From Ascidiella aspersa (lineage: Eukaryota): a stretch of DNA of 64,000 nucleotides. The stretch is taken from NCBI GenBank assembly GCA_963924565.1, contig OZ004609.1, forward strand, positions 5,208,001 to 5,272,000, read 5' to 3'. The translations under genes were made by a program, and so were the position numbers. Positions 10,787 through 62,017 of the stretch are shown piece after piece (position 1 is the first letter of the stretch; each line of letters starts with the position of its first letter). The notes below the pieces were generated by a model. That model was not told the DNA's origin. It searched no databases and saw only the letters and a list, made by a program, of their open reading frames with translations.

Positions 10787-10816
10787 GTGGAGCAATTTAC
10801 CTTATTCAAATAGAAT
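10787..10816 (-). ncRNA. SL RNA 5' part (exon + 14 nt intron) fused to E2
   Basis: ATTCTATTTGAATAAG|GTAAATTGCTCCAC followed by element sequence. Confidence 0.85.
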
Positions 10817-11363
10817 ACTTTAAAATCGCGCGGCTAAGGCTTTATGCGAAGGCCAACTTTCAAAAACGCCAGTTTACTCAATATACGATTGTATGACTTC
10901 ACCACCTATATAAGGGTGTCGCCAGAGAGGCGCTGGTAAGTATTCACCATGCTATGTGGTCACGTGGTACTTCGCGTTGTTCGAAATTTCTTGTCGCGCC
11001 CCGTTCGTTTCAACCGCGACATTTTTAACAAAAAATTAACGCTCAAAAAGCCAACTCAACATTGATCCCAATGCATATCGCGCGCTGTGGCACTTCAAAG
11101 GGCGGCCTACACGCAAGAGAGAAGCGCCCTACGGTAAGTTGGAGGAAGCGTCACCTGCGAAAGCCACGGGGGTCGGGCAGACTTGCAAAGGAGAGAGAGG
11201 AGCTGATTTTGGTTATGGGAGAGTGGGCCAGGGCTATACATGCATTTTCGCCATCTCTTAATTTGACAAAGGACGCGATTACGCGATTTGGGGATTTTGC
11301 TACATGAATGCAATACAGTGGGGGTAGCTTGGCTAAGCGATTGATTGGTTCTAAAAAATATTC
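10787..11363 (-). repeat. SL RNA gene repeat unit (1 copy of the 584-bp unit, split by insertions at both ends)
   Basis: Near-identical to the units at 43024-45357; SL exon at 10801-10816. Confidence 0.95.
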
Positions 11364-12096
11364 TTTTTGGTTAAGAAAAATAGAAATGAAGTACAGCGAA
11401 CGAGATAAAAGTCCAACGAAAAGTGGAGAAAAGAGGATAAAACAAGTCGGTATTGCGCTAAACGATATGGCGAGAGGGTCGATAATTGAGATATTGGCGA
11501 TATAACTGCGATTAGGGAATATAGGCGAACATATGAGATTTAGTCGATAATGTATAAGTTTATATCAACTAGGTACAGACATACTTTAATGAATTCACGC
11601 TTACATTCGGACGTACTAGCATATGCGAGTGTGTATATATTTGCTGGTCTGATGGGCAAGTGTTTTGTTAGTGGGTATAGTGGTGGCATAATCCGGCTGT
11701 GAGGGTAGTATGTAGTTTAGCATTGTTGCTACGCTCGAGCATTGTATGCGCTTTGAGGAATCCAGTTGTAGGTTTATTGATATAACGGTGAAGGTAGGGT
11801 AGTGTGTAGTTGGGTTATGTTTTAGGTTATAACCCTTTAGACAATGGAGATTCTGCTGCGCTCAGACATGTATGTGCTTATAGTATTATCATTGCATTGC
11901 AGTTGTAATGTCGTGCTTTGGCAGTGAAGGCAGTGTGTAATTTAGTTATAATGTAGATCATAACCTTTAGGCATATGGGGAGGGTGTGGTGACTGAAGAC
12001 TATTTTGTCTTTGATATTAATGCTATATTGGGTTGATTCGTTATACGGAACATGGGATTTTACGAAATAGCACTATTTGAATAGTATTAATTTACT

Positions 12097-12169
12097 GGAC
12101 TGACCCGGGGTTCGAACCCGGGCCCTATAGGTTACACTACCGGCGCTCTAGCCATTGTGCCATTGAGTC
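12097..12169 (-). promoter_or_regulatory. tRNA-derived Pol III internal promoter (A box + B box), family B-type 3' UTR
   Basis: A box TGGCACAATGG, B box GGTTCGAACCC, intact T-arm CCGGG/CCCGG; anticodon stem broken; resembles tRNA-Thr(TGT). Confidence 0.75.
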
Positions 12170-12266
12170 GGTTGGTGATGTCTCCGTGTTTGGAGTTGTT
12201 ATTCTAGCGTTGTGTTGGTTAGTGCGACTCGTTTTTGCTTTTTGTGCATTTGGCTGCGTTGTTGAG

Positions 12267-15200
12267 TTAATCAAGGTTATCGTCTGTGTTTAGTTGTGTT
12301 TGTATGAGGTTTATTATGTTTTTGAATTTGACTTTGATTTTCCATGTTGTTTCATTTACAAAGTCCTGTGCATTGTGTAGATATTCATTTTCAGCTGTTA
12401 GTTTGTTTTTTTCATTTATTAGGATTTGTTTTGTTAATATTAGCAGTTTTTGCTTGCTGAGGCTTTTTTCAAATTCTGCTGGGTTTTGGTTATAAATGGT
12501 TGCGTGGTGGTCGGGGATGAAGGTGTGGCCGTATTCGTTTACTGTTATTTGATTGAGTTTTGTGTAGATTTTTTTGGTGATGTTGCATTCATTTAGGAGG
12601 TGGTAGATGTTGTCTTTTGGTCCGTGGCAGAAGTTGCATCGATTAATTCTTAGTTGTCCTGTCGAAGTTCGATTTATATTTCTTGAGTTGCGGAAATCGC
12701 CCCATTTATAGCTTTGGTGTGCTGTTAAGTAGGAGGTTTCGCGTTCATTATTATTGTATAGCTTTTTGTGTTTCCGTCCGTTCAGATGTATGTGTGTCCA
12801 GTTGATTGGGATTCGATCCATTTTTAATTCTGCCGAGATTGCTTTATTTTGCATAAGGATGTTGTAAATTGCCCTCATTTTATTATGTTTCCAATCGAAG
12901 TCACCGTGTTCCTGTTGAATTTTGTTGAATTGTTCTATGATAGATTTCCAGGTGGGATTTATTTTGTCTGCTTTTGGGTAGTGGTTGCCAAAAAGATGAG
13001 GGATTATGTTTTTTCCTTTTGTTCCAAGGGCGTGCATGTACCATATATGGTATGGTTGGGTTGGCGTGTCCGTCTTTTTTAGGTGTGAAATTTTTTTCGA
13101 GTTGGGCAGCAGCGATTTTAGTTTCCAGATCCGGCATTTTGATTCCACCTTCTTGTTTTGTGTTTAAAAGTTTTAGCCGTTTAATTGGTTCAATTTTTTT
13201 TGGGTGCCACAGGAATTCGTACAGTAGTTTGTTTATTTCTTTTATTATTTTTTTTGTCGGTATGATAATACGTGCGATATGGATTATTTGTGAGATCATT
13301 AGAGCATTTATAATGTGTATTTTCCCGTAAATTGTTTGGTTGAGTTTATTGAATTTGTGTTGTATGGCTTGAATTTTGTTTTTCGCTTTTATCCAGTTAA
13401 TATTTATTAGTGAGTATTGAGTGTTGTAATGTATGCCTAGAATTTTAACTTGTTCTTTAATGTGTTGTGGGTATAATTCTAAAAGTTGTGTTTTTATGAA
13501 GGGTGTAAAGGTAATAATTTGAGTTTTGTCCATGTTAAGTTTTTGTCCTGTTATATTTTGGTAGATTTTGAGTTCCTTGAAGAGTTCCAGCGCACTGTTT
13601 TTGTCCGAGATATAAAATGTGTTGTCGTCCGCAAATTGCTGTATGACGATTTTTGTTTTGAAAAGTTTAAATCCTGTTATTTTTTTGTTCCTTTTTATCA
13701 TTTTGTTTAAGATTTCTCCTATACAGGTGTATAGCAGCATACTAAGGGGACATCCTTGGCGGAGGCCTCTTTTTATGGTGATTTTTTCAGTTAGTTCGCC
13801 GTTAACTTCCAGTTGGCTGTTTATGTCAGTGTATAATATTTCGATCCATTTGATGAGATTTTGGTTGATTCCAAAGGATGTGAGGGTTTTTATTATTAGT
13901 GCGTGGTCTACTCGGTCAAAAGCTTTCTCGAAGTCTGTGAGTACGATTGCTAGTTCCTCCGTTTTTGCTTTTGCGTACTCTATGACTGAAGTGGTATTGT
14001 AGTGGATATGTTCGATACGTCTGTCTTCTATGCCGCATTTCTGATCTATGTTTATTTTATCTTTTAATTTCTTTTTTAGCTTGTTTGTGATGATTTTGCT
14101 GAGAATTTTGTATTCTGTCGTTAGTACCGAGATCGGGCGCCAGTTTTTGATGTCTTCGGGGGGTCCTTTTTTTGGTAGAAGCTTGGTTAATGCGGTTTTC
14201 ATGGTTTCGGTCATGTTTTCCTTTAGGTATATGTTAATAAAAACTTCGTGCAGATCTTCTTTAAGATCTTTCCAAAAATGTTGATAGAATTCGGACGTAA
14301 GTCCGTCGATTCCCGGTGTTATATTCTTGTTTAGTTCTTTCATGGCTTTGGTGAGCTCTTGTGGGGTTAAATATTTTTCTTCCGTTTTTTCTCTAGCAGG
14401 TGAGTTGTTGAATTGTAGTATTTTGTCTTGTCCTTCGATGTCCAGATTGTCCTTTTTTCCCCATAGGTTGTGATAAAATTTTTGTATTTCTTTTTTTTTA
14501 TAGTTTTCTGTTTTTATGAGTGTTCCATTTTCATCTTTTAGATTTCCTATTTTTTGTTTTTCTCCGTTTGTTCTTTCCAATTGATAAAAGTGCCTGTCCG
14601 GGGTTTCGCTGTCAGTAAGATTTTTTATTCTTGCTCGAATTTTTGCTCCGAAGGTCCGTTTTCTGTCTATTTCTTTTAATTTTTCGATAGTGGTGATGTA
14701 TTCTTCGTTGTGTGTCGTATCTCTGTTATTTATTCTTGCATTTATTATTTTTAGTTTATTTTTGAGTTGATTTTCTTCTATGTTTTCCGTTCGTTTCTTT
14801 TCTATACAATATGTTATGGTTTCTTTTTTAATTTTTTTTTTAGGTGGTCCCACCACGCCAGTAGGTGTGGGTGATTGTTTTTTTTTGTTTTTTCGTTGGC
14901 TATGGTTTGTTTTATTAAGTTTGTATACTTTTCGTCTTTTAATATGTCGTTGTTTATTTTCCAGTGGTTGCTTATTTTTTTTTGGTTTGTAGTTTTGCCG
15001 AGTGTGATGTAGGGTGCTTGGGTGTGATCCGATAGAGTGTGAGTGATATGTCCTGTTTTGAAAATTTTACTTGTATTGTTATCTCTGTTGTATATACGGT
15101 CGATTCTGGTTGCCATTGTTTGGGTTATTCGCGTGTAGGTTATTGAATTTGGGTAGCGTTGTCTGAATGTGTCCTGAAGGTTTAACTGTGCTTTTGTGTC

Positions 15201-15767
15201 GCGCCATTGTTTTCGGTCCTTTGTATTATATATATTGGTATTAGTTGTATCGATGTCGTTTTCTATGAAATTGAAGTCCCCCATTAGGATGAGGTCGTCG
15301 TAATGGTTTGCGTTTTGGTTTAGGTATTTTTCTATCTCATGGATTTGGTTGGTTCTTTGTTTTATTTGTGCGTTTGCTTGGCCAGATTTTAGGTAGATAT
15401 TCAGGAGTCTTGTTTTTTTATGGTTCTTGATTTCGTTTTTGTGTGTTAGTGTAATTTCTTGTATCCAGTTTTGTAGTATTATGTTTTGTTCGATGTCCCA
15501 GTTTGAATTGATTTCTTCCTTATATAATACGAGCGTGCCTTGCCAGAAATGTTTTACATTTTCGTTTGTGTTAATGTTTAGTACGTATTTAAGTTTTTCC
15601 TTTTCGGCCCAATTTTTAAGACTGTTTTCGTTTATTTTGTGGGTTTCTTGCATAAGGCAGATATCGATTTCGTTTTGTTTGATGAATGTTCCTAGTTGGT
15701 GTAGTTTGTTGTGTATTCCGTTAATGTTTAGTGTGCATATCTTTAATGTTGTGTTGGTGTGTGACAT
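12267..15767 (-). pseudogene. E3 ORF2 (APE endonuclease-RT) with two homopolymer frameshifts
   Basis: Three overlapping ORFs; T10 versus T11 near 14832-14841 and T7 versus T6 near 13091 relative to E4; could be sequencing errors. Confidence 0.85.
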
Positions 15768-15822
15768 AATGTTCAAGAAAGAGGGGGAAGACGCAAAGAT
15801 TTAAAAGTACGATTTATATATA

Positions 15823-17595
15823 TTAACCAATGGTGGCGTTTACTTGGACTATTATACCGGATGAGTTAACACTAATTTCGGGTGGTGTGTTCTGTATATT
15901 TCTTCGTTTGTTTTCTTCATCGTCGGTGGATAGTTGTCGTTTTCTTTCGTTTTCCAGGGGTGTTGAGTGCTGTATGGGGTTTGGGTTATTTGGTGTCGGT
16001 AATTCATCTTCTTTGGATTCTTCTTGGTTGGCTTCTTTTTTTGGCGGTTTTTTTCTTCTGTGTTTTGGTCTTTTTCTTGTTTTTTTTGGATGGTAGTTTT
16101 CGTCATCAGAAGGTTCCGTGTTGGTTGTATTGAAGTTTGGATAAAGATTGAGGAAGACAGACGAGTAGTCGTCGCTAGAAAGAGGGGGTGAGGAAGAGGA
16201 GGAGGAGGAGTGGGAGAGGGAGGAGGAGGGAGGGTTGTAGTCGTTGTCATGGTCGTCTGGTAACGATGCGATGGTTGAGGGAACGGAGTCAGGTGGGTCG
16301 GATAGGTTTGGCGGTCCTAGGTAGGGTGATTCGATTTTTTCAGTTGGAGGTGTATTTTGTACGGGGATATTTGGGGTGGATGGTTTGATGTTTTGGTCTG
16401 GTTGGTTTCTTGCTTCTTCGTTGGTATGGTTAGATCCTGGGCTTATTGGCTTGTTATTTAGGTGGTCTGCGGAAGTTGACGGGATGTTTTCTTGTATGTC
16501 TTGGGGTGCCGGTAGATTGGTTCGTTGCGGGTTTTCGTTTATGTTTTCTGTGTCCATTTTTTCATTTCCGTTTTCGTTATCAGGGATTAGATTTTCTGCT
16601 ATCTCGATAATTTCATCTTTCTTGTGTAGCTCTTTTTCTTTGCTGTGGGAATGATTTGTTGCGTTGGATTCGTTGCTTTGGTTTAAGGTGTGATTCGGGG
16701 TTGCCATGAATCCTTGGTTGAAGATTTCCTGTTTTCTTAGTCTTTCTTCTAACTGTTTGATTACGGCTTCCAAGGAGGCCGTATTTTTTGGGTCGAAACG
16801 GTTTGCTGGTGTTGACGTTCTGAAACCTTGCAATTTTGGGAATTCTCTGTCAAAGATTTGGTCGTGTGTCTCGCTGGGTGGTTTGTTATGGAGGAGATCG
16901 CGGTCAAATTCTGGTGTTATAATTGGTTCGTTGGGGCAGTCTTTCATCAGGTGTCCTGTTTTAAAACAGAGGCGGCATGTTTGGGGGTTGGGACATTGGC
17001 TAGCCCAATGTCCCCTCTCGTTGCAATTTCTGCATACCGGTCCGAATGATTGGCCTGGTTTCACGATTTGTATCCTGTTTTTCTTGTAGAATATTTCCGG
17101 CTGGATGTTTTCAAGTTTAGGATCTACTAAGAATAGATTAACGTAGCCATTCATCTTATCTTGTCTTGATTTGTGTGTGCAAAATTGAGTACCTTTAGGT
17201 TTTCCCCATTGTAATTCAGACGCTATTTTAAAGATATGATCTTGTGTCCATTCAAACGGGATCGGGAATAGGGTAATTTTGGTTTGGGGGAGGGTGGGTT
17301 CGAAAGATTTCAATTCTATTATTTGTCTATCTGATGTTCGAATTTCTTTACCGTTTTCTAGTTCTTTGTGAAGTCTATCTCGGTTATATTGAAGGCGTGG
17401 ATTTTCCTTATTAAATGTTATTTGGTAGGTTTGGTTCTTTCTGTTGAGTGTCCTTGCTCCTGTGATATTTTCATCATATTTTTTCAGTGCTTGTTCCTCA
17501 TCGAACAATGATAGGAAGTTTATTATCGTAAAGTTCGATGTGTTACGAACTTGAATGTTTAGTGAACGTGTAGCAGTATATTCTAATATATTCAT
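15823..17595 (-). CDS. E3 ORF1 (family A), gag-like nucleic-acid-binding protein with two CCHC knuckles, 590 aa
   Basis: CRNCNERGHWASQC and CRLCFKTGHLMKDC; first ATG at 17595 matches the 590-aa E8 ORF1. Confidence 0.9.
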   Translation of the reverse strand: MNILEYTATRSLNIQVRNTSNFTIINFLSLFDEEQALKKYDENITGARTLNRKNQTYQITFNKENPRLQYNRDRLHKELENGKEIRTSDRQIIELKSFEPTLPQTKITLFPIPFEWTQDHIFKIASELQWGKPKGTQFCTHKSRQDKMNGYVNLFLVDPKLENIQPEIFYKKNRIQIVKPGQSFGPVCRNCNERGHWASQCPNPQTCRLCFKTGHLMKDCPNEPIITPEFDRDLLHNKPPSETHDQIFDREFPKLQGFRTSTPANRFDPKNTASLEAVIKQLEERLRKQEIFNQGFMATPNHTLNQSNESNATNHSHSKEKELHKKDEIIEIAENLIPDNENGNEKMDTENINENPQRTNLPAPQDIQENIPSTSADHLNNKPISPGSNHTNEEARNQPDQNIKPSTPNIPVQNTPPTEKIESPYLGPPNLSDPPDSVPSTIASLPDDHDNDYNPPSSSLSHSSSSSSSPPLSSDDYSSVFLNLYPNFNTTNTEPSDDENYHPKKTRKRPKHRRKKPPKKEANQEESKEDELPTPNNPNPIQHSTPLENERKRQLSTDDEENKRRNIQNTPPEISVNSSGIIVQVNATIG

Positions 17596-17686
17596 ACTTA
17601 TTTGTAGGGGAAAGGCGCAAAGGGAAGAAAGATACGGAGGGAAAGTGCGATACAAGAAAGGGTACAACAAACAATGTGGTGAGTGT

Positions 17687-17721
<35 letters not shown>

Positions 17722-18669
17722 TATTATTAAGTATTTTTATTATTTACCGTTAGACGGCGCTAGAGAGCAGTGGATTTTTTTGGGGTTCGGCACAAACTGT
17801 TTATTTTTTTATTAACCGCTAGACGGCGTGGTGTGTGTTTTTTTGATTTGTCGGTAGATGGCGCTAGTGTGGCAAATATTTGATCAGGGCTTCGCCTCAA
17901 ACGCTTAAAGGGTGGGGCGAAAAAACGACAGAGTACGAATACGATGACAGGCGGTAACAAGACAGTTAAGCTCCGCTGCAAGTTTTGGGATGTCAGGAAA
18001 AAAACAAACAAAAAGTACGAGCCAATTAGTGACGTCACTTCCGACGTCGAGGGATGAAAAATTTACAAGTATTAGAAAAGGTAGTACCACTAAGGGGCAG
18101 TAGAGATCTCGAAAATTTGCCGGGAGCTTCGCTGTATTTTTAAATACGAGTAGGCGGAAAAAGTTCTAAGTCCGTCAAGAGAGTCTCTGAGACTTCTCTC
18201 GGCGTACTTAGAAGCGCAAAAAACCACAAACACGACAAAAAATTAATAACGAGGCGAAAGAGGAGGCACCACTGATTGGCGCACTACTAGAACGTAGTTT
18301 ACCCAAGTTGAAACACTTGGCGAGAAAGATTACAAAGGCGCAAAAAATCTACAATACGATCAATAACAAACACACAATTAAAGTTTGATAGCGGTCTTTT
18401 GCTTAGAGCAAAGAGTTGGTTTTAGCACGATTAAGTACCACAAATAGTAGAAAAGTAACAACAGGTCCCTACAAAAGCCTGCCTGCCGCCCCTGCAACTG
18501 TTTGTTACAGCGGCTGCTGACTAATGCCTTCTAGTAAGGCCTGACACGAAAAGCGCAACAAAAAACCTCTAATAGGTTGAAATTACAAAAGAGTACGTCA
18601 CAAGGGTATATCCAAAAGGTTGAAAGGCTCGCAGTTGCGGGTGATTCTACGCAAATAAGATAAAGTCCG

Positions 18670-19247: not shown

Positions 19248-20006
19248 TTTTTTTTATATTATTTATTGGTTAAGAAAAATAGAAATGAAGTACAGCGAAC
19301 GAGATAAAAGTCCAACGAAAAGTGGAGAAAAGAGGATAAAACAAGTCGGTATTGCGCTAAACGATATGGCGAGAGGGTCGATAATTGAGATATTGGCGAT
19401 ATAACTGCGATTAGGGAATATAGGCGAACATATGAGATTTAAGTCGATAATGTATAAGTTTATATCAATTAGGTACAGACATACTTTAATGAATTCGCGC
19501 TTACATTCGGACGTACTAAGCATATGCATGTGCGAGTGTGTATATATCTACACTGGTATATTTGCTGGTCTGATGGGTAAGTGTTTTGTTAGTGGGTATA
19601 GTGGTGGCATAATCCGGCTGTGAGGGTAGTATGTAGTTTTAGCATTGTTGCTACGCTCGAGCATTGTATGCGCTTTGAGGGATCCAGTTGTAGGTTTATT
19701 GATATAACGGTGAAGGTAGTGTGTAGTTTGGTTATGTTTTAGGTCATAACCCTTTAGACAATGGAGATTCTGCTATGTTCAAACATGTATGTGCTTATAG
19801 TATTATCATTGCATTGCAGTTGTAATGTCGTGCTTTGGCAGTGAAGGCAGTGTGTAATTTGGTTATAATGTAGATAATAACCTTTCGGCATATGGGGAGG
19901 GTGTGGTGACTGATGACTATTTTGTCTTTGATATTAATGCTATATTGGGTTGATACGGAACATGGGATTTTACGAAATAGCACTATTTGAATAGTATTAA
20001 TTTACT

Positions 20007-20079
20007 GGACTGACCCGGGGTTCGAACCCGGGCCCTATAGGTCATACTACCGGCGCTCTAGCCATTGGGCCATTGAGTC
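20007..20079 (-). promoter_or_regulatory. tRNA-derived Pol III promoter in E4 3' UTR
   Basis: A box TGGCCCAATGG; B box GGTTCGAACCC. Confidence 0.75.
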
Positions 20080-20176
20080 GGTTGGTGATGTCTCCGTGTT
20101 TGGAGTTGTTATTCTAGCGTTGTGTTGGTTAGTGCGACTCGTTTTTGCTTTTTGTGCATTTGGCTGCGTTGTTGAG

Positions 20177-23662: not shown

Positions 23663-23710
23663 ATTGAAAGAGAGTAAGGGGAAGGCGTAAGTTTGAAATA
23701 ATATAACGAT

Positions 23711-27735: not shown

Positions 27736-27833
27736 GGCTAGTCTGTGGTCAGTATTTGGCGAAGTTATTTGTGCGTGGTAGTTGAGTGCGTCTCGTTGCT
27801 GCTTATTTTGCTTAGGGCTGTGATTTGATGTTT

Positions 27834-45955: not shown

Positions 45956-46027
45956 TTCGGCGGCGGGGTTTGAACCCGCGGTCTCAGGACTTGATACCCG
46001 GTGACTTAGCCACTCGGCTATTCAGTT
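45956..46027 (-). promoter_or_regulatory. tRNA-derived Pol III promoter in E7 3' UTR
   Basis: Same A and B boxes as E6. Confidence 0.75.
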
Positions 46028-50786: not shown

Positions 50787-50973
50787 TCCGTCCGGTGAGA
50801 GGGATCACTGTGGAGAAAATGAGTATGATGAGCGACTGGCCAAGGAGGAAGAATTATACATGAAATAAAAACTACGATTACGGTTATGATTATAATTACA
50901 GTTACGTTTACGATTATGATATGCTTTGTTATGGAATTGGTGTTCGTGTGAATGTGTGTGATGCCTAGCTTGG

Positions 50974-52302: not shown

Positions 52303-53064
52303 GCTGACCAAGCTAGGAGTGTATTTTATGTATATTTTGTTGTGATGTTGCGATTATTTTTTGGTGTTATATTCAATAAATACAAAAATGGGTTAATTTT
52401 CAAGGGTGTTTTTGTGTTTTACACGATTTGCATATAGTTTTACAGAGCACGAATAGGGTGTTGTTATTTAAATAAGTGTATAAATATTAAGAGTTATGAA
52501 TATATATAAATATATATATATATATTAGATTATATAAATCAATTTGAAGTTTTCTGATAGAAAATGGCGGACTTATGGTCCCACCAATAAGTTAAAGTTG
52601 TGAAAAAAATGGCGGCAAAGCAGAAACAAAATGGCGGCCGAACAGCGGCGTTAAATATAATTAAAGAACAAAGGACTAAGATAGAAGCCCCCTAAGCCCA
52701 CCGCTGGTGGGAGCCAACGGACCGCCGCCAGTCAAGCCGACGACGTCGGCAAGACTGACAGAGGTCCAAGGACTTTTGCCACCCACAAATGGGAAAAAAA
52801 GGCCGCTAGCTGTCTAATAACAATAACAGTAAGGCTGCTTCTACTTTTATACATAAAAGAAAAAACTGCACACTGCAACTGAAAACACAACTTAAGCACA
52901 ACCTGAAAACCAGGGCTGCTACAGCCACTAAATCTCCACAAACTATAATAAATAATTCTAAAAAAATTGGAAAAACTGGAAAAAATGGAAAACAGGAAAA
53001 AAAAGCAAAAAAGCAGCGGGCAGCGCGATTCCGTTTGAATTGGGTAGTTGCTAGGGTCCAACAC

Positions 53065-53641: not shown

Positions 53642-54311
53642 TTTTTTTTTTTTTTTTTTTTTTTTATCTTTTTTATTGGTAAGAAAAGAAATGAAAATAC
53701 AGCGAAACAGGTTAAAAGTCCAACGTAAAGTGGAGAAACGAAAAGTAATAAAATGGCATTGCGCTAAACGACGATGGGACAGGGCGATACGATCATAGAT
53801 ACAGGCGAGAAATTGCGATTTTAGTAGGTAAGCGATAAGTTAACTAATTGAGCGATATTCCATGGTTATACAATGACTAGAACATGAACATATAAGATTT
53901 TCAATCGTTACGGTTGCGATACATAAGTGAATGTGAAGGTGTGTGTAGGCAGGTTTACTGCTCGAAAGGATGTGGATGGGATTGCGAATACATTTACAGT
54001 TGTAAAGGTAGTGTGTAGGTAGCGTTATTGCTACGCACGAGCACACACACACACACACGCGGAAGTGGGGACAGTTGTATTATTTTTTATGCGGGTTGCA
54101 TGGGAGTGAAGGTAGTATGTATATTGCGATGCTGCGCTCGAGCATACGCGGAAATACGAGAAGGGATATTGTTAATTTGCATTTTGATAATGCAGTCAGA
54201 GTGGTTCTGCTTAGGCCTTATTCATGGAGTATTGCAATTTGGGATAAGGCAATTTTTGTTTACTGTTGTTGCGAGATATGAGACTAATTTATTATTAACG
54301 GAGAATTTTGA

Positions 54312-54383
54312 GGTAGCTCAGGGGTTCGAACCCGTGCCCTTAGGATTGCAGAGCTGGCGCTTTAACCATTAAGCCAATCGGTC
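54312..54383 (-). promoter_or_regulatory. tRNA-derived Pol III promoter in E8 3' UTR
   Basis: A box TGGCTTAATGG; B box GGTTCGAACCC. Confidence 0.72.
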
Positions 54384-54481
54384 GGTTAGTCCGTGGTCAG
54401 TATTTTGCAATGTTATTTGTGCGAGGTAGTTGAGTGTGTTTCCTTATTGCTTATTATGCTTAGGGCTGTGATTTGATGTTA

Positions 54482-57400
54482 TTACTCGGGGTTGTTTTCT
54501 ATGTTCGTTTGTGTTTGGATGTCATTTAATATGGTTTTAAATTTTACTTTTATTTTCCAAGTTGTTTCGTTTACAAATTCTTGTGGGTTATGCAGGTATT
54601 CGTTTTCTGTTGTAAGTTTGTTTTTTTCGGTTATTAGTATATGCTTTGTGAGAACCAGTAATTTTTGTTTGCTCAGACTGTGTTGAAATTCTGTTGGGTT
54701 TTGATTGTATAGGATGGCGTAGTGGTCTGGGGTAAAGGTGAATCCGTGTTCATGGGTTGCTATTTGATTAAGGTTTGTATATATTTTTTTTGTTATGTTG
54801 CATTGGCTTAGCAGGTGTTTTATATTGTCGTTGGGCCCGTGGCAGTAGTTGCATCTGTTTATTCGAATTTTTCCTGTTGATGTCCTGATTATGTTACGTG
54901 ATTTTCGGAAGTCGCCCCATTTGTATGCTTGGTGAGCCGTGAGGTAAGATGTTTGCCGTTCTGTATTATTAAATATTTTTTTTTGTTTCGGTTTGATTAA
55001 GTGTATATTTTCCCAGTTTATTGTTTTGTTTTCCATTTTTATTTCAGTATGTATTGCTTTTTTTTGGATAAGGATGTCGTAGATGGCTCGCATTTTGTTA
55101 TTTATCCAGTCGAAGTCGTTATGTGTTTCGTATATTGTATTGTAGTGTTTGATAATGAGTTGCCATTGTGGGTTAACTTGCTGCTGTTTAGGGTAGTGAT
55201 TGCCGAATAAGTGCGGGATGATGTGTTTTGCTTTAGTGCCCATTTGGTACATATACCAACTTTGAAAGGGTTGTGTGGGCTCGATGGTGTTTTTCATTTG
55301 TGATATTTTTTCCAGTTGAGCCGCAACAATTTTAGTTTCGAGGTCTGGCATTTGAATCCCACCGTTTCGTTTCGTGTTTATGAGTTTACGTCGCTTAATA
55401 GGTTCAATTTTTTTAGGGTGCCACAGGAATTCGTACAGTAATTTGTTTATTTCTTTTATTATTTTTTTTGTCGGTATGATAATACGTGCGATATGGATTA
55501 TTTGTGAGATCATTAGAGCATTTATAATGTGTATTTTCCCGTAAATTGTTTGGTTGAGTTTATTGAATTTGTGTTGTATGGCTTGTATTTTGTTTTTCGC
55601 TTTTATCCAGTTAATATTTATTAGTGAGTATTGCGTGTTGTAGTATATGCCTAGAATTTTAACTTGTTCTTTAATGTGTTGTGGGTATAGTTCTGAAAGT
55701 TGCGTTTTTATGAAGGGTGTAAAGGTAATAATTTGAGTTTTGTCCATGTTTAGTTTTTGTCCTGTTATATTTTGGTAGTTTTTGAGTTCCTTGAAGAGTT
55801 CCAGCGCACTGTTTTTGTCCGAGATATAGAATGTGTTGTCATCCGCAAATTGTTGTATAAAGATTTTTGTTTTGAATAGTTTAAAGCCTGTTATTTTTTT
55901 GTTCCTTTTTATCATTTTGTTTAAGATTTCTCCTATACAGGTGTATAGCAGCATACTAAGGGGACATCCTTGACGGAGGCCTCTTTTTATTGTGATTTTT
56001 TCAGTTAGCTCGCCGTTCACTTCCAGTTGGCTATTAATGTCTGTATATAAGATTTCTATCCATTTGATGAGGTTTTGATTGATTCCAAAAGATGTGAGGA
56101 TTTTTATGATTAGTTCGTGGTCTACTCGGTCAAAGGCTTTCTCAAAGTCTGTAAGTACGATTGCCAGTTCTTCTGATTTTGTTTTTGCGTACTCTATGGC
56201 TGAGGTGGTATTGTAATGGATATGTTCGATACGTCTGTCTTCTATGCCGCATTTCTGATCTATGTTTATTTTATCCTTTAATTTCTTTTTTAGCTTGTTT
56301 GTAATGATTTTGCTGAGAATTTTGTATTCCGTTGTTAAAACCGAAATCGGGCGCCAATTTTTAATTTCGTTTAGAGGTCCTTTTTTTGGTAGTAATTTGG
56401 TTATTGCAGTTTTCATCGTTTGCGTTAGATTTCCTTGTAGTTGTATATTAATGAAAAGCTCATGTAGATCTTCCTTTAGTTGTTGCCAAAAGTGTTGATA
56501 AAATTCCGAAGTCAGTCCATCGATTCCCGGGGTCGTGTTTTTGTTTAAATCTTTCATTGCTTTTGTTAGGTCGGTTAGTGGAAAAAATTTATCTTCTATT
56601 TTTTCTGTATTTGAGGTTTGTTCTGTTTTGAGTATTTTGTTTTGTCCGTTTATGTCTAGGTTGTCTTTTTTTCCCCATAAGTTGTAGTAGAAGTTGTGTA
56701 TTTCTGTTTTGATTTCCGCGTTGGTTTGTATTAAATTTCCTTTCTCGTCCTTGATTTTATCTATTTTTTGTTTTTCGCCGTTTTGTTTTTCTATTTGATA
56801 AAAGTGTCTGTCTGGTGTTTCATTTTCTGCTAGGTTTTTGATTCTGGAACGTATTTTCGCTCCCGCTGTGCGTTTTCTTTCCATTTCTTTCAGTTTTTCT
56901 ATAATTGATATGTATTGTTCGTTATGGGTTGTGTTTCTGCTATTCATTTTTGCATGTATTGATTTTAGTTTGTTTCTGAGTTCATTTTCTTCGATGTTTT
57001 CTGTGCGTTTTTTTTCGATGCAGTAAGTTATGGTTTCTTTTTTGATTTTCTTTTTGAGGTGTTCCCACCACGCTAGTAGGTGTGGGTGTTCGTCTTTTTT
57101 TGTTTTTTCGTGTTCTATGGTTTGTTTTATTGCGTTTGTGTATTTTTCGTCTTTCAAGATATCATTGTTTAGTTTCCAGTGTCCGTTTATAATTTTTTTT
57201 TTGTTAATTTTACCAATTGTTATGAATGGTGCTTGAGTGTGATCTGATAGTACATGTGGGATGTGTCCTGTTTGGTAGATTTTATTTGTGTTGTTGTCTT
57301 TGTTGTATATTCTGTCTATTCGTGTTGCTATTGTTGGGGTTACGCGTGTGTAGACTTTAGTATTGGGGTAGCGTTGCCTGTAGGTATCTTGTAAGCTAAG

Positions 57401-57982
57401 TTGTGTTTTTGCTTGTCGCCATTGTTTTCGGTCTTGTGTGTTGTGTGTATTTGTGTTTGTAGAGTCGCTATCGTGTTCTGTGAAGTTGAAGTCCCCCATT
57501 AGAATGAGGTCGTCGTAATAGTTTGCGTTTTGGTTTAGATATTTTTCTATCTCATGGATTTGGTTGGTTCTTTGTTTTATTTGTGCATTTGCTTGGCCAG
57601 ATTTTAGGTAGATATTCAGGAGTCTTGTTTTTTTATGGTTCTTGATTTCGTTTTTGTGTGTAAGTGTAATTTCTTGTATCCAGTTTTGTAGTATTATGTT
57701 TTGTTCGATGTCCCAGTTTGAATTGATTTCTTCCTTATATAATACGAGCGTGCCTTGCCAGAAATGTTTTACATTTTCGTTTGTGTTAATGTTTAGTATG
57801 TATTTAAGTTTTTCCTTTTCGGCCCAATTTTTAAGACTGTTTTCGTTTATTTTGTGGGTTTCTTGTATAAGGCAGATATCGATTTCGTTTTGTTTCATGA
57901 ATGTTCCTATTTGGTGTAGTTTCTTGTGTATTCCGTTAATGTTTAGTGTGCATATCTTTAATGTTGTGTTGGTGTGTGACAT
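54482..57982 (-). CDS. E8 ORF2: APE endonuclease-RT
   Basis: Complete motifs; ATG at 57982. Confidence 0.97.
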   Translation of the reverse strand: MSHTNTTLKICTLNINGIHKKLHQIGTFMKQNEIDICLIQETHKINENSLKNWAEKEKLKYILNINTNENVKHFWQGTLVLYKEEINSNWDIEQNIILQNWIQEITLTHKNEIKNHKKTRLLNIYLKSGQANAQIKQRTNQIHEIEKYLNQNANYYDDLILMGDFNFTEHDSDSTNTNTHNTQDRKQWRQAKTQLSLQDTYRQRYPNTKVYTRVTPTIATRIDRIYNKDNNTNKIYQTGHIPHVLSDHTQAPFITIGKINKKKIINGHWKLNNDILKDEKYTNAIKQTIEHEKTKKDEHPHLLAWWEHLKKKIKKETITYCIEKKRTENIEENELRNKLKSIHAKMNSRNTTHNEQYISIIEKLKEMERKRTAGAKIRSRIKNLAENETPDRHFYQIEKQNGEKQKIDKIKDEKGNLIQTNAEIKTEIHNFYYNLWGKKDNLDINGQNKILKTEQTSNTEKIEDKFFPLTDLTKAMKDLNKNTTPGIDGLTSEFYQHFWQQLKEDLHELFINIQLQGNLTQTMKTAITKLLPKKGPLNEIKNWRPISVLTTEYKILSKIITNKLKKKLKDKINIDQKCGIEDRRIEHIHYNTTSAIEYAKTKSEELAIVLTDFEKAFDRVDHELIIKILTSFGINQNLIKWIEILYTDINSQLEVNGELTEKITIKRGLRQGCPLSMLLYTCIGEILNKMIKRNKKITGFKLFKTKIFIQQFADDNTFYISDKNSALELFKELKNYQNITGQKLNMDKTQIITFTPFIKTQLSELYPQHIKEQVKILGIYYNTQYSLININWIKAKNKIQAIQHKFNKLNQTIYGKIHIINALMISQIIHIARIIIPTKKIIKEINKLLYEFLWHPKKIEPIKRRKLINTKRNGGIQMPDLETKIVAAQLEKISQMKNTIEPTQPFQSWYMYQMGTKAKHIIPHLFGNHYPKQQQVNPQWQLIIKHYNTIYETHNDFDWINNKMRAIYDILIQKKAIHTEIKMENKTINWENIHLIKPKQKKIFNNTERQTSYLTAHQAYKWGDFRKSRNIIRTSTGKIRINRCNYCHGPNDNIKHLLSQCNITKKIYTNLNQIATHEHGFTFTPDHYAILYNQNPTEFQHSLSKQKLLVLTKHILITEKNKLTTENEYLHNPQEFVNETTWKIKVKFKTILNDIQTQTNIENNPE

Positions 57983-58037
57983 GGTGTTCAAGAAAGAGGG
58001 GGAAGACGCAAAGGTTTAAAAATACGATTTATATATA

Positions 58038-59810
58038 TTAACCAATGGTGGCGTTTACTTGGACTATTATACCGGATGAGTTAACACTAATTTCGGGTGG
58101 TGTGTTCTGTATATTTCTTCGTTTGTTTTCTTCATCGTCGGTGGATAGTTGTCGTTTTCTTTCGTTTTCCAGGGGTGTTGAGTGCTGTATGGGGTTTGGG
58201 TTATTTGGTGTCGGTAATTCATCTTCTTTGGATTCTTCTTGGTTGGCTTCTTTTTTTGGCGGTTTTTTTCTTCTGTGTTTTGGTCTTTTTCTTGTTTTTT
58301 TTGGATGGTAGTTTTCGTCATCAGAAGGTTCCGTGTTGGTTGTATTGAAGTTTGGATAAAGATTGAGGAAGACAGACGAGTAGTCGTCGCTAGAAAGAGG
58401 GGGTGAGGAAGAGGAGGAGGAGGAGTGGGAGAGGGAGGAGGAGGGAGGGTTGTAGTCGTTGTCATGGTCGTCTGGTAACGATGCGATGGTTGAGGGAACG
58501 GAGTCAGGTGGGTCGGATAGGTTTGGCGGTCCTAGGTAGGGTGATTCGATTTTTTCAGTTGGAGGTGTATTTTGTACGGGGATATTTGGGGTGGATGGTT
58601 TGCTGTTTTGGTCTGGTTGGTTTCTTGCTTCTTCGTTGGTATGGTTAGATCCTGGGCTTATTGGCTTGTTATTTAGGTGGTCTGCGGAAGTTGACGGGAT
58701 GTTTTCTTGTATGTCTTGGGGTGCCGGTAGATTGGTTCGTTGCGGGTTTTCGTTTATGTTTTCTGTGTCCATTTTTTCATTTCCGTTTTCGTTATCAGGG
58801 ATTAGATTTTCTGCTATCTCGATAATTTCATCTTTCTTGTGTAGTTCTTTTTCTTTGCTGTGGGAATGATTTGTTGCGTTGGATTCGTTGCTTTGGTTTA
58901 AGGTGTGATTCGGGGTTGCCATGAATCCTTGGTTGAAGATTTCCTGTTTTCTTAGTCTTTCTTCTAACTGTTTGATTACGGCTTCCAAGGAGGCCGTATT
59001 TTTTGGGTCGAAACGGTTTGCTGGTGTTGACGTTCTGAAACCTTGCAATTTTGGGAATTCTCTGTCAAAGATTTGATCGTGTGTCTCGCTGGGTGGTTTG
59101 TTATGGAGGAGATCGCGGTCAAATTCTGGTGTTATAATTGGTTCGTTGGGGCAGTCTTTCATCAGGTGTCCTGTTTTAAAACAGAGGCGGCATGTTTGGG
59201 GGTTGGGACATTGGCTAGCCCAATGTCCCCTCTCGTTGCAATTTCTGCATACCGGTCCGAATGATTGGCCTGGTTTCACGATTTGTATCCTGTTTTTCTT
59301 GTAGAATATTTCCGGCTGGATGTTGTCAAGCTTAGGATCTACTAAGAATAGATTGACGTAGCCATTCATCTTATCTTGTCTTGATTTGTGCGTGCAAAAT
59401 TGAGTGCCTTTAGGTTTTCCCCATTGTAATTCAGACGCTATTTTAAAGATATGGTCTTGTGTCCATTCAAACGGGATCGGGAATAGGGTAATTTTGGTTT
59501 GGGGGAGGGTGGGTTCGAAAGATTTCAATTCTATTATTTGTCTATCTGATGTTCGGATTTCTTTACCGTTTTCTAGTTCTTTGTGAAGTCTATCTCGGTT
59601 ATATTGAAGGCGTGGATTTTCCTTATTAAATGTTATTTGGTAGGTTTGGTTCTTTCTGTTGAGTGTCCTTGCTCCTGTGATATTTTCATCATATTTTTTC
59701 AGTGCTTGTTCCTCATCGAACAATGATAGGAAGTTTATTATCGTAAAGTTCGATGTGTTACGAACTTGAATGTTTAGTGAACGTGTAGCATTATATTCTA
59801 ATATATTCAT
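58038..59810 (-). CDS. E8 ORF1 (family A), 590 aa
   Basis: Two CCHC knuckles. Confidence 0.93.
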   Translation of the reverse strand: MNILEYNATRSLNIQVRNTSNFTIINFLSLFDEEQALKKYDENITGARTLNRKNQTYQITFNKENPRLQYNRDRLHKELENGKEIRTSDRQIIELKSFEPTLPQTKITLFPIPFEWTQDHIFKIASELQWGKPKGTQFCTHKSRQDKMNGYVNLFLVDPKLDNIQPEIFYKKNRIQIVKPGQSFGPVCRNCNERGHWASQCPNPQTCRLCFKTGHLMKDCPNEPIITPEFDRDLLHNKPPSETHDQIFDREFPKLQGFRTSTPANRFDPKNTASLEAVIKQLEERLRKQEIFNQGFMATPNHTLNQSNESNATNHSHSKEKELHKKDEIIEIAENLIPDNENGNEKMDTENINENPQRTNLPAPQDIQENIPSTSADHLNNKPISPGSNHTNEEARNQPDQNSKPSTPNIPVQNTPPTEKIESPYLGPPNLSDPPDSVPSTIASLPDDHDNDYNPPSSSLSHSSSSSSSPPLSSDDYSSVFLNLYPNFNTTNTEPSDDENYHPKKTRKRPKHRRKKPPKKEANQEESKEDELPTPNNPNPIQHSTPLENERKRQLSTDDEENKRRNIQNTPPEISVNSSGIIVQVNATIG

Positions 59811-60850
59811 ACTTGTTTGTAGGGGAAAGGCGCAAAGGGAAGAAAGATACGGAGGGAATAGTGCGATACAAGAAAGGATACAACAAACAATGTGGTGAGT
59901 GTGTTTTTATTTTTTTTATTATTTACCGCTAGACGGCGCTAGAGAGCAGTGGATTTTTTTTGGGGTTCGCCACAAACTGTTTATTTTTTATTAACCGCTA
60001 GACGGCGTGGTGTGTGTTTTTTTGATTTGTCGGTAGATGGCGCTAGAGTGGCAAAAATTTGATCAGGGCTTCGCCTCAAACGCTTAAAAGGGTGGGGCGA
60101 AAAAACGACAGAGTACGAATACGATGACAGGCGGTAACAAGACAGTTAAGCTCCGCTGCAAGTTTTGGGATGTCAGGAAAAAAACAAACAAAAAGTACGA
60201 GCCAAATAGTGACGTCACTTCCGACGTCGAGGAATGAAAAATTTACAAGTATTAGAAACAGTAGTACCACTAAGGGGCAGTAGAGATCTCGAAAATTTGC
60301 CGGGAGCTTCGCTGTATTTTTAAATACGAGTAGGCGGAAAAAGTTCTAAGTCCGTCAAGAGAGTCTCTGAGACTTCTCTCGGCGTACTTAGAAGCGCAAA
60401 AAGCCACAAACACGACAAAAAATTAATAACGAGGCGAAAGAGGAGGCACCACTAATTGGCGCACTACTAGAACGTAGTTTACCCAAGTTGAAACACTTGG
60501 CGAGAAAGATTACAAAGGCGCAAAAAATCTACAATACGGTCAATAACAAACACACGATTAAAGTTAGATAGCGGTCTTTTGCTTAGAGCAAAGAGTCGGT
60601 TTTAGCACGATTAAGTACCACAAATAGTAGAAAAGTAACAACAGGTCCCTACAAAAGCCTGCCTGCCGCCCCTGCAACTGTTTGTTACAGCGGCTGCTGA
60701 CTAATGCCTTCTAGTAAGGCCTGACACACGAAGAGCGCAACAAAAACCTCTAATAGGTTGAAATTACAAAAGAGTACGTCACAAAGGTATATCCAAAAGG
60801 TTGAAAGGCTCGCAGTTGCGGGTGATTCTACGCAAATAAGATAAAGTCCG

Positions 60851-62017
60851 GGTGGAACAAGTTACCTTATTCAAATAGAATACTTTAAAATCGCGCGGCT
60901 AAGGCTTTATGCGAAGGCCAACTTTCAAAAACGCCAGTTTACTCAATATACGATTGTATGACTTCACCACCTATATAAGGGTGTCGCCAGAGAGGCGCTG
61001 GTAAGTATTCACCATGCTATGTGGTCACGTGGTACTTCGCGTTGTTCGAAATTTCTTGTCGCGCCCCGTTCGTTTCAACCGCGACATTTTTAACAAAAAA
61101 TTAACGCTCAAAAAGCCAACTCAACATTGATCCCAATGCATATCGCGCGCTGTGCCACTTCAAAGGGCGGCCTACACGCAAGAGAGAAGCGCCCTACGGT
61201 AAGTTGGAGGAAGCGTCACCTGCGAAAGCCACGGGGGTCGGGCAGACTTGCAAAGGAGAGAGAGGAGCTGATTTTGGTTATGGGAGAGTGGGCCAGGGCT
61301 ATACATGCATTTTCGCCATCTCTTAATTTGACAAAGGACGCGATTACGCGATTTGGGGATTTTGCTACATGAATGCAATACAGTGGGGGTAGCTTGGCTA
61401 AGCGATTGATTGGTTCTAAAAAATATTCCACCGTGGTGGAGCAACTTACCTTATTCAAATAGAATACTTTAAAATCGCGCGGCTAAGGCTTTATGCGAAG
61501 GCCAACTTTCAAAAACGCCAGTTTACTCAATATACGATTGTATGACTTCACCACCTATATAAGGGTGTCGCCAGAGAGGCGCTGGTAAGTATTCACCATG
61601 CTATGTGGTCACGTGGTACTTCGCGTTGTTCGAAATTTCTTGTCGCGCCCCGTTCGTTTCAACCGCGACATTTTTAACAAAAAATTAACGCTCAAAAAGC
61701 CAACTCAACATTGATCCCAATGCATATCGCGCGCTGTGCCACTTCAAAGGGCGGCCTACACGCAAGAGAGAAGCGCCCTACGGTAAGTTGGAGGAAGCGT
61801 CACCTGCGAAAGCCACGGGGGTCGGGCAGACTTGCAAAGGAGAGAGAGGAGCTGATTTTGGTTATGGGAGAGTGGGCCAGGGCTATACATGCATTTTCGC
61901 CATCTCTTAATTTGACAAAGGACGCGATTACGCGATTTGGGGATTTTGCTACATGAATGCAATACAGTGGGGGTAGCTTGGCTAAGCGATTGATTGGTTC
62001 TAAAAAATATTCCACCG
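60851..62017 (-). repeat. SL RNA gene tandem repeat, 2 x 584 bp
   Basis: SL exons at 60866-60881 (fused to E8) and 61450-61465 (intact). Confidence 0.95.
61416..61465 (-). ncRNA. Intact spliced-leader RNA gene
   Basis: Identical to 34769-34818. Confidence 0.9.

What the first reader, a model, noticed from the sequence alone, without database searches (positions are those of the whole stretch)
10787..62017. APE-type (L1/Tx1-like) retrotransposons that site-specifically colonise chordate spliced-leader RNA genes
Seen: seven 5' junctions and seven 3' junctions all fall within intron nt +14 to +22 of the SL RNA gene in the 584-bp repeat. Every element is co-directional with SL transcription, and 7 of 12 SL copies are occupied by three protein families. 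Known: the SL-targeting retroelements I know (CRE/SLACS/CZAR in trypanosomatids, NeSL in nematodes) use restriction-like endonucleases. Tx1-clade APE elements are known to target other multicopy RNA genes such as U2, tRNA clusters and 5S. Inference: this is an independent, possibly undescribed origin of SL targeting. Insertion separates the SL promoter and exon from the Sm site and U-tract, so the element RNA would be a read-through transcript starting with the capped SL exon.
Basis: partly seen in the sequence, partly recalled or inferred. Interest (0 to 1): 0.93.

Follow-up and report, generated by a model that had tools for sequence, protein, structure and literature searches.

The report
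LINE retrotransposons living in spliced-leader genes
In this sea-squirt-like genome, several old but still intact lineages of L1-like jumping genes insert at one spot inside the tandem spliced-leader RNA genes and carry the start of that gene as their own 5' end. This implies they are transcribed from the host gene's promoter, and I found no published example of this for this type of element.

Summary
The window (G000:C3:5208001-5272000) holds 12 copies of a 584-bp unit on the minus strand. Each has the exact 16-nt Ciona-type spliced leader followed by GTAAGT. Seven copies are interrupted after intron +14/+15 and resume at +16 or +22. All eight elements (two run off the window) are 7.1-7.8 kb, co-oriented with the SL gene and poly(A)-tailed, with a CCHC ORF1 and an APE+RT ORF2.

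Genome-wide:
- About 338 SL units sit in one array, with 18 insertions, all at this site.
- Full-length copies of both clades are otherwise found once, on C2.
- Co-resident lineages differ by dS of 0.02 to saturation with dN/dS of 0.08-0.25, and 16 of 18 keep both ORFs. These are therefore repeated independent insertions, not array duplication.

New here:
- The C2 copy has perfect 11-bp target duplications and begins exactly at SL nucleotide 1, so the template RNA starts at the SL transcription start.
- 17 of 18 occupied heads, and 0 of 163 empty units, have lost the +5 G of the splice donor. It is C, A or T depending on lineage, and both ectopic copies found carrying a changed head (C2, C7) have the clade-A variant.

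RNA-seq gave no verdict. The L1 versus Tx1 clade was not resolved. I found no paper describing this; Repbase could not be checked.

The parts
43638..44221 (-). Reference intact 584-bp SL RNA gene unit. It runs: 16-nt SL exon, GTAAGT donor, hairpin TCCAC-CACG-GTGGA, U-rich Sm-like tract, then spacer and promoter of the next unit. Other intact units lie at 60882-61465, 44222-44805, 43054-43637 and 34235-34818.
62019..64000 (-). E1 (= I08), clade B, 3' part only. The element runs off the window end. Its 3' junction is (GA)nA(n) joined to unit position 32.
53642..60850 (-). E2 (= I07), clade A1, 7209 bp. ORF1 at 58038-59810, ORF2 at 54482-57991, both open. Head at 60851-60881 reads GTAACTTGTTCCACC. 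The poly(A) tail joins unit position 38.
45359..53064 (-). E3 (= I06), clade B, 7706 bp. ORF1 at 50974-52311, ORF2 at 47196-50786, both open. Head at 53065-53094 has T at intron +5.
35372..43023 (-). E4 (= I05), clade B, 7652 bp. ORF1 at 41001-42338, ORF2 at 37223-40813, both open. Head at 43024-43053 has A at intron +5.
27001..34203 (-). E5 (= I04), clade A1, 7203 bp. ORF1 at 31390-33243, ORF2 at 27834-31343, both open. Head at 34204-34234 has C at +5 and T at +9.
19248..26422 (-). E6 (= I03), clade A2, 7175 bp, with a distinct ORF1 module. ORF1 at 23711-25411, ORF2 at 20177-23662, both open. Head at 26423-26453 has C at +5 and T at +9.
11364..18669 (-). E7 (= I02), clade A1, 7306 bp. ORF1 at 15823-17670 is open. 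ORF2 is broken into pieces (12267-15776). This is the only occupied copy whose head (18670-18700) keeps the wild-type GTAAGT.
1..10786 (-). E8 (= I01), a decayed composite of two clade-B copies, 11137 bp in all. It runs 351 bp past the window start to a unit remnant only 89.5% identical to the reference, at the edge of the array. Head at 10787-10816 has A at +5.
10787..11363 (-). Example of an occupied unit: the head (unit 1-30, 10787-10816) belongs to E8 and the remnant (unit 38-584, 10817-11363) follows E7. The other 3' remnants are at 18701-19247, 26454-27000, 34819-35371, 44806-45358, 53095-53641 and 61466-62018.

Best explanation
These are autonomous non-LTR (LINE) retrotransposons of the L1/Tx1 group. 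ORF1 carries CCHC knuckles. ORF2 has an apurinic-type endonuclease, a reverse transcriptase and a C-terminal Cys/His motif. They are specialised on the tandem spliced-leader RNA genes of an ascidian-type genome.

Shown:
- Two deep clades (A and B, 37% ORF2 identity), each with several long-lived, recombining lineages under purifying selection, insert at one 8-nt window in the loop and 3' arm of the only SL RNA hairpin (intron +14 to +22).
- Insertions are always in the sense orientation and always full length. There is no target duplication; 1-6 bp of target are lost.
- The element as copied includes the SL exon and the first 12-15 intron nucleotides. An ectopic copy flanked by target duplications begins at SL nucleotide 1, and ectopic copies carry the clade-specific head variant.

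Inferred:
- The genomic RNA is made by the upstream SL gene promoter and reads from the capped SL exon through the element to its own AATAAA/poly(A) site. The Sm site and U-tract are left downstream.
- After the ORF2 endonuclease nicks the bottom strand and reverse transcription is primed from the target, the end of the cDNA that is complementary to the SL head pairs with the target's own SL head. This would explain exact, full-length 5' junctions and the replacement of the target head by the element's head.
- Loss of the +5 G of the donor site (C, A or T by lineage) weakens use of the chimeric RNA as an SL donor, which would otherwise cut off its cap.
For: Site and orientation. All 18 insertions in 264 kb lie at unit position 30/31 to 32/38, and all are sense.

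Protein type.

Genome-wide restriction:
- The 3' ends and ORF2s of A and B are found in the C3 array, plus one intact copy on C2 and decayed fragments near the array and on C5/C7.
- Exact pattern search finds 348 SL heads, about 338 of them in array context.

Independent insertions:
- Elements are 74-100% identical to each other while their flanking units are about 100% identical.
- dN/dS is 0.08-0.25 with dS up to saturation, and 16 of 18 copies have both ORFs open.

Head is part of the element:
- At C2, TATGAATAATT flanks an SL head plus a 7.2-kb A copy. The same 11-mer then flanks a second SL-headed 1.4-kb element.
- Intron +5 is changed in 17 of 18 occupied heads and 0 of 163 empty units (Fisher p = 6e-23).
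- Genome-wide, 19 heads match a pattern that requires a non-G at +5 and otherwise allows only C/T at +9. The two outside the array (C2, C7) carry the clade-A C/T variant, and each is followed by clade-A 5' sequence.
- A decayed A-like copy on C5 also aligns through the head.

Other: there is no ribozyme or any other Rfam family in the window. AATAAA lies just before the tails.
Against: - No RNA evidence. A raw RNA-seq run of the same species label gave only 6 reads on 6 kb around a 5' junction.
- snRNA-type promoters are, from general knowledge, poorly suited to long polyadenylated transcripts.
- The 5' UTR contains promoter-like motifs: a TGACGTCA palindrome and CCAAT-like boxes about 150-400 nt upstream of ORF1. 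An internal promoter that fixes the start at element nucleotide 1 is therefore not excluded.
- The non-autonomous element D and one clade-A copy keep GTAAGT, so loss of +5 G is not obligatory.
- Endonuclease specificity is not tested.
- The nearest relatives of A by ORF2 identity are not B but copies at other loci: C8 60%, C7 42-49%, C1 40%. SL specificity is therefore not obviously a single origin within this genome.
Confidence: 0.82

Rival explanations
1. One or two ancient insertions were simply amplified with the array by unequal crossing-over. The shared junctions reflect common descent of the DNA, not site-specific integration.
For: I11 and I12 are identical and spaced by exactly one element plus two units (8242 bp). 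I13 and I15 are identical. Tandem arrays do turn over in this way.
Against: Copies differ by dS of 0.02 to more than 1 while their flanks are about 100% identical. dN/dS is 0.08-0.25 and 16 of 18 copies are intact, which neutral in-place decay would not give. Poly(A) lengths differ between copies. Two clades with different junctions (31/38 versus 30/32) use the same hairpin. Ectopic copies with target duplications show real retrotransposition.
Confidence: 0.05
2. The elements are site-specific, but they are transcribed from their own internal promoter, which places the start at element nucleotide 1. The SL head is only a fossil of the first insertion, kept because it helps 5' joining by homology.
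For: The 5' UTR is long (0.7-1.1 kb) and holds a TGACGTCA palindrome and CCAAT-like boxes. Many LINEs have internal promoters. The SL start matches an initiator-like sequence.
Against: In the array every copy sits directly behind an SL promoter region identical to that of working units. Transcription from it must enter the element unless it is stopped within 15 nt. The head ends exactly at SL nucleotide 1 in the ectopic copies, as expected for the SL start site. The repeated loss of +5 G only makes sense if the donor site is present in a functional RNA.
Confidence: 0.12
3. The SL at the 5' end was added to the element RNA by ordinary trans-splicing, as for host mRNAs, and then copied back into DNA.
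For: Other notes on this genome report SL-capped cDNA copies (unchecked leads).
Against: The heads contain 12-15 nucleotides of the SL intron after the exon. Trans-splicing removes these.
Confidence: 0.01

Closest known systems
CRE1/CRE2, SLACS, CZAR (trypanosomatids) and NeSL-1 (Caenorhabditis): SL-gene-specific non-LTR retrotransposons
   Same: They have the same kind of target (tandem spliced-leader RNA genes) and insert in sense orientation at one fixed position. The logic is the same: a multicopy RNA gene is a safe site.
   Different: Those elements use a restriction-like (PD-(D/E)xK) endonuclease placed after the RT and belong to the early-branching CRE/NeSL groups (PMC4640811). The elements here have an N-terminal apurinic-type endonuclease and resemble L1 ORF2p. 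They insert in the intron-like part of the gene, not the exon (exon insertion for the known ones is from memory), and the host is a chordate.
Tx1-clade target-specific LINEs (Tx1L, Keno in U2 snRNA genes, Dewa in tRNA arrays, Mutsu in 5S genes; Kojima and Fujiwara 2004, from memory and as cited in PMC4640811)
   Same: They are APE-type, L1-related two-ORF LINEs with strict specificity for multicopy small RNA genes.
   Different: No SL-gene-specific member is reported in the papers I could search. Clade membership of the present elements was not tested by phylogeny. An element that carries the host gene's transcribed 5' end with a disabled splice donor is not, to my knowledge, described for them.
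R1/R2 elements of rDNA
   Same: Several old lineages coexist in one tandem array. The element depends on the host gene's promoter (co-transcription in R2). Decayed copies lie at array edges. Target sequence at the RNA 5' end helps 5' joining.
   Different: R2 has a restriction-like endonuclease and frees itself from the co-transcript with an HDV-like ribozyme. No ribozyme is found here, and the host-derived head stays on the RNA. R1 is APE-type but belongs to another clade and another target.
LINEs at histone gene starts in this same genome (earlier scan finding s1-790814)
   Same: They are L1-like LINEs associated with a tandem, highly transcribed gene array and are said to use its promoters. 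The closest relative of clade A (60% ORF2 identity) lies 5 kb from the histone array on C8.
   Different: The target is different. I could not fetch that DNA, so the relation rests on identity values and coordinates only.

Membership tests
Target-specific non-LTR retrotransposon | RT plus endonuclease ORF, a 3' poly(A) or simple-repeat tail, and no LTRs | tested here: met
   Pfam RVT_1 and Exo_endo_phos are found in all ORF2s tested. A(n) or (GA)nA(n) tails are present at every 3' junction.
Target-specific non-LTR retrotransposon | The large majority of copies lie at one defined sequence position | tested here: met
   All 18 in-array copies lie at intron +14/+15 to +16/+22. Only one other intact copy (C2) was found genome-wide, plus decayed fragments.
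Target-specific non-LTR retrotransposon | Copies arise by repeated integration, not only by duplication of the target array | tested here: met
   dS runs from 0.02 to saturation with dN/dS of 0.08-0.25. 16 of 18 copies are intact. Flanks are about 100% identical.
Target-specific non-LTR retrotransposon | The element's endonuclease cuts the target sequence specifically | not testable with these tools
   This needs recombinant protein. The only hint is two independent insertions at one identical ectopic 11-bp site that contains GAATA, as the SL target does.
L1 group (L1/Tx1 clades) | N-terminal APE domain with its catalytic residues, an L1-like RT, and a C-terminal Cys/His motif | tested here: met
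   Human L1 ORF2p is the best PDB match over residues 5-890 (E 4e-72). The alignment shows QETH, GDFN, RIDRIY, SDH, F/YADD and a C-terminal C-x2-C...H...C motif.
Tx1 clade | Placement inside the Tx1 clade in an RT phylogeny with reference elements | not tested
   No named Tx1 or L1 reference sequences could be obtained. Homologue and atlas searches returned unnamed proteins of at most 36% identity.
CRE/NeSL SL-specific elements | A restriction-like endonuclease C-terminal to the RT, and no APE domain | tested here: not met
   An APE domain lies at residues of about 6-260 and no other nuclease family is detected.
R2-type co-transcribed elements | A self-cleaving ribozyme at the 5' end releases the element RNA from the host transcript | tested here: not met
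   No Rfam family reaches threshold anywhere in the window. The host-derived head is retained in retrocopies.
SL RNA gene (target identity) | SL exon identical to a known SL, GT donor, stem-loop, Sm-like U-rich site, tandem multicopy arrangement | tested here: met
   The exact Ciona 16-mer is present, followed by GTAAGT, a hairpin and an ATATTTTTTA tract. About 338 tandem copies were found.
SL RNA gene (target identity) | The 16-mer is found on this species' mRNAs | not tested

The most novel reading that the evidence does not exclude
A chordate LINE clade has made the host spliced-leader gene's promoter, cap site and exon into its own 5' end, and has repeatedly disabled the SL splice donor (+5 G changed to C, A or T in separate lineages) so that its genomic RNA is not consumed by trans-splicing. 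Its close relatives in the same genome have moved between different tandem gene arrays (SL genes and histone genes), forming a guild of LINEs that live on host promoters.
Probability: 0.45. Interest if true: 0.8.

Novelty: new variant of a known kind. Interest (0 to 1): 0.7.

Why it matters
- SL-gene-specific retrotransposons are known only from trypanosomatids and nematodes, and there they use a restriction-like endonuclease. An APE-type, L1-related lineage doing the same in a chordate would be a clear case of convergent choice of niche.
- The copies also give a readable genetic record of how a LINE borrows a host small-RNA promoter: the host-derived head is retained, ectopic copies mark its exact 5' end, and the splice donor is repeatedly lost.
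- A short palindromic target, two clades with nick sites a few bases apart, and many intact natural variants make this a workable system for studying how APE endonucleases acquire sequence specificity and how full-length 5' joining works.
- For genome annotation, about 5% of the assembled SL genes here (7 of 12 in this window) are interrupted in this way.

Tried and rejected
- RNA support: the look-up of sequencing runs found one raw RNA-seq run with the same species label. Read laying on window:55500-61480 laid only 6 reads, 4 of them partial. This gives no verdict on expression or on the transcript start.
The ectopic SL-headed sites on C1, C3, C4, C5, C6 and C7, the C7 cluster and most of the C8 locus were seen only as coordinates and identities.
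- Clade naming: the search for homologous proteins, the listing of cluster members and the protein-atlas search gave only unnamed relatives of at most 36% identity. No L1-versus-Tx1 tree was made.
- Rfam: no SL RNA, ribozyme or other family was found in the window. A weak tRNA hit in the 3' UTR of the C8 element (33.7 bits) was not confirmed by ARAGORN.
- Flank variants: I looked for variants in the flanking units that track element lineage and found none. The few variants mark the array edge only.
- Rejected readings: trans-spliced SL, pure array amplification, and assembly artefact. The same junctions recur in many diverged copies and at an unlinked locus.
Copies were only compared pairwise.


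Full report
**1. What is in the window**

A 584-bp unit is repeated 12 times. Read on the minus strand, each copy starts with the exact 16-mer ATTCTATTTGAATAAG followed by GTAAGT. This 16-mer is the published spliced leader of Ciona intestinalis (PMC1488885, PMC7986045).

After the donor site comes the only stable hairpin, TCCAC-CACG-GTGGA, and then ATATTTTTTA, an Sm-like U-rich tract. Rfam has no model that matches it. The unit is best read as an ascidian-type SL RNA gene. The intron-like part differs from that of C. intestinalis, so this is another species.

**2. The junctions**

BLAST of one unit against the window gives five uninterrupted units, seven heads and seven tails.
- The heads end at unit position 30 or 31, which is intron +14/+15.
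- The tails resume at unit position 32 or 38, which is intron +16/+22.
- Every tail is preceded by A(n) or (GA)nA(n), with AATAAA a few bases upstream.

Between them lie elements of 7.1-7.8 kb whose ORFs run in the same direction as the SL gene. One element runs off each end of the window.

**3. What the elements are**

- ORF1 is 442-590 aa. It has a conserved N-terminal domain followed by one to three CCHC knuckles.
- ORF2 is 1161-1204 aa, with an N-terminal Exo_endo_phos (APE) domain and a central RVT_1 domain.
- The best solved relative is human L1 ORF2p, aligned over residues 5-890 (E 4e-72). R2 proteins match only in the RT domain.
- The A/B alignment shows the APE catalytic motifs, F/YADD, and a C-terminal Cys/His motif.

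These are therefore APE-type LINEs of the L1/Tx1 group, not restriction-like-endonuclease elements. I could not decide between the L1 and Tx1 clades. No named references could be brought in, and outside relatives are unnamed and at most 36% identical.

**4. The whole array**

The window is G000:C3:5208001-5272000 in a 308.6-Mb assembly. I read 264 kb around it.
- It holds 181 exact SL heads, four 200-N gaps and two changes of orientation at gaps.
- It holds 18 insertions, every one at position 30/31 to 32/38 and every one in sense, including the two in the inverted part.
- Genome-wide there are 348 exact heads. About 338 are in array context and about 10 lie elsewhere.
- A pattern for heads changed at +5 finds no further occupied units beyond the 264 kb, so about 5% of assembled units are occupied. 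This pattern would miss an occupied head that keeps GTAAGT.

**5. Site-specific integration, not array duplication**

The 18 copies fall into two clades.
- Clade A has 8 copies, with junctions at 31/38.
- Clade B has 10 copies, with junctions at 30/32.
- The two clades share 37% ORF2 identity.

Within a clade, nucleotide identity ranges from 74% to 100%, and the copies are mosaic. The flanking units are about 100% identical away from the array edge.

Sixteen of 18 copies keep both ORFs open. Between co-resident lineages, dS runs from 0.02 to saturation while dN/dS stays at 0.08-0.25. This is the signature of lineages that keep transposing, not of dead DNA carried along by unequal crossing-over.

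ORF1 and ORF2 give discordant distances. For I03 versus I11, ORF1 dS is 0 and ORF2 dS is 1.45. The lineages therefore recombine.

Only two pairs are identical (I11 = I12, one element plus two units apart; I13 = I15). These may be duplications or very recent events.

Searches with the 3' ends, 5' ends and ORF2s of A and B find the following:
- the array copies;
- one intact copy on C2;
- decayed pieces just outside the array (C3:5.08-5.21 Mb);
- decayed pieces on C5 and a short 5' piece on C7.

**6. The element includes the SL head (new here)**

At C2:36.74 Mb the minus strand reads as follows:
- TATGAATAATT;
- SL exon plus 15 intron nucleotides plus a 7.2-kb clade-A copy (ORF2 97% identical, open) plus a long poly(A);
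- TATGAATAATT;
- SL exon plus 12 intron nucleotides plus a 1.4-kb element plus poly(A);
- TATGAATAATT.

The 1.4-kb element (D) encodes only an ORF1-like N-terminal domain and ends with a clade-A-like tail, so it is probably non-autonomous.

Perfect 11-bp duplications with a 5' end exactly at SL nucleotide 1 mean that the RNA that was copied began at the SL transcription start. Because intron nucleotides are present, the SL was not added by trans-splicing. Two separate insertions at the identical ectopic position also argue for a sequence-specific nick. That site contains GAATA, as the SL target does, but this is a single case.

**7. The splice donor is hit (new here)**

Of 163 empty units in the 264 kb, none differs at intron +5. 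Of 18 occupied heads, 17 do (Fisher p = 6e-23).
- Clade A has C at +5 (with T at +9).
- Clade B lineages have A or T at +5, in step with their 5' UTR type.

Genome-wide, 19 heads match a pattern that requires a non-G at +5 and otherwise allows only C/T at +9. The two outside the array (C2, C7) carry the clade-A C/T pair and continue into clade-A 5' sequence. The head is therefore inherited with the element and replaces the target's own head on integration.

At least three independent changes have hit the same base, while the exon, GT and nearly all other head positions stay fixed. This points to selection for a weakened donor. I infer that this protects the chimeric RNA from being used as an SL donor, which would remove its capped exon. 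This is inference. Element D and one broken clade-A copy keep GTAAGT.

**8. Proposed mechanism**

Shown: the target position, orientation, full-length state, loss of 1-6 target bases without duplication in the array, the head carried in the RNA, and poly(A) tails.

Inferred:
- Transcription starts from the upstream SL promoter. In occupied units this promoter is identical to that of working units.
- The RNA is polyadenylated at the element's own signal. It therefore lacks the Sm site and U-tract, which lie beyond the insertion.
- The APE domain nicks the bottom strand opposite +21/+22 (A) or +15/+16 (B), in the hairpin-coding palindrome.
- Reverse transcription runs to SL nucleotide 1. The cDNA end then pairs with the target's SL head to complete the 5' junction.

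A possible internal promoter in the 5' UTR (TGACGTCA palindrome, CCAAT-like boxes) is not excluded and is kept as a rival. RNA-seq gave only six reads.

**9. Relatives in the same genome**

By ORF2 identity, clade A is closer to copies elsewhere than it is to clade B:
- C8:18.236 Mb, 60%, intact;
- C7:14.2-14.8 Mb, 42-49%, some intact;
- C1:37.77 Mb, 40%.

The C8 copy lies 5 kb from a tandem histone array at C8:18.248-18.301 Mb. This fits an earlier scan note on LINEs at histone gene starts (s1-790814). I tested that note only to this extent.

The 5' UTRs of the C7 and C8 copies align to clade A only from about position 113-154 onward, so no SL head was seen there. Either SL specificity arose more than once, or relatives have changed target. 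I could not fetch those loci.

**10. Comparison and novelty**

Known SL-specific elements (CRE/SLACS/CZAR, NeSL) use a restriction-like endonuclease (PMC4640811), and that membership test fails here. Tx1-clade elements target U2, tRNA and 5S genes, and SL genes are not among their reported targets.

Seven full-text searches found no description of an APE-type SL-specific LINE or of any SL-gene LINE in tunicates. Repbase Reports, including a 2012 entry on Ciona savignyi non-LTR elements cited in PMC4640811, are not in the library. Prior cataloguing therefore cannot be excluded.

I rate this a new variant of a known kind: a site-specific LINE in a multicopy RNA gene, with two features I did not find described. 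These are the retained host head and the repeated loss of the donor's +5 G.

**11. Limits**

- The single read-laying run was uninformative.

Noticed in passing
L025:60-1470 (G000:C2:36739871-36741281, minus strand): This is a 1.4-kb element D. It has an SL exon plus 12 intron nucleotides, a 193-aa ORF resembling only the N-terminal domain of ORF1, and a clade-A-like tail, and it is flanked by the same 11-bp duplication as the neighbouring clade-A copy. It is probably a non-autonomous partner. A D-like head (80% over 184 nt) also abuts the diverged terminal SL unit at about C3:5206954-5207140.
   Followed up: partly
G000:C8:18247660-18301164 and C8:18231215-18242412: A tandem histone gene array has irregular spacings that suggest insertions. 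The closest relative of clade A (60% ORF2 identity, open frame) lies 5 kb from its edge. This links to earlier scan finding s1-790814.
   Followed up: partly
G000:C7:14199856-14812691: This is a 0.6-Mb cluster of related LINE copies (33-50% ORF2 identity to A). It includes two identical intact copies 15,960 bp apart and one SL-headed clade-A 5' fragment at C7:14748040. The target or array there is unknown.
   Followed up: no
window 59930-60240 (minus strand), 5' UTR of E2; also L028:1280-1500 and L025:1020-1150: A shared block of promoter-like motifs (TGACGTCA palindrome, GGCGAAGCC...CCAATTTTT, repeated CTCTAGCGCC) recurs in the 5' UTRs of several lineages and next to the C8 element. It may be an internal promoter or a protein-binding module.
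   Followed up: no
L028:2242-2314 (minus strand; C8:18236356-18236428): Rfam gives a weak tRNA match (33.7 bits, E 0.0016) inside the 3' UTR of the C8 LINE. ARAGORN does not confirm it.
   Followed up: yes
window 1-10786 and C3:5207146-5207649: The array edge holds a composite of two decayed clade-B copies and a unit remnant only 89.5% identical to the array units. Further decayed clade-B fragments lie at C3:5083000-5105300 and C3:5154010. This resembles the element graveyards at the edges of rDNA arrays.
   Followed up: partly
Read laying on window:55500-61480, run X2: Contig word depth is about 25,000-36,000 on the SL unit against about 140-250 on element E2. The real array is probably much larger than the roughly 338 assembled units, which fits the four assembly gaps inside it.
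   Followed up: no
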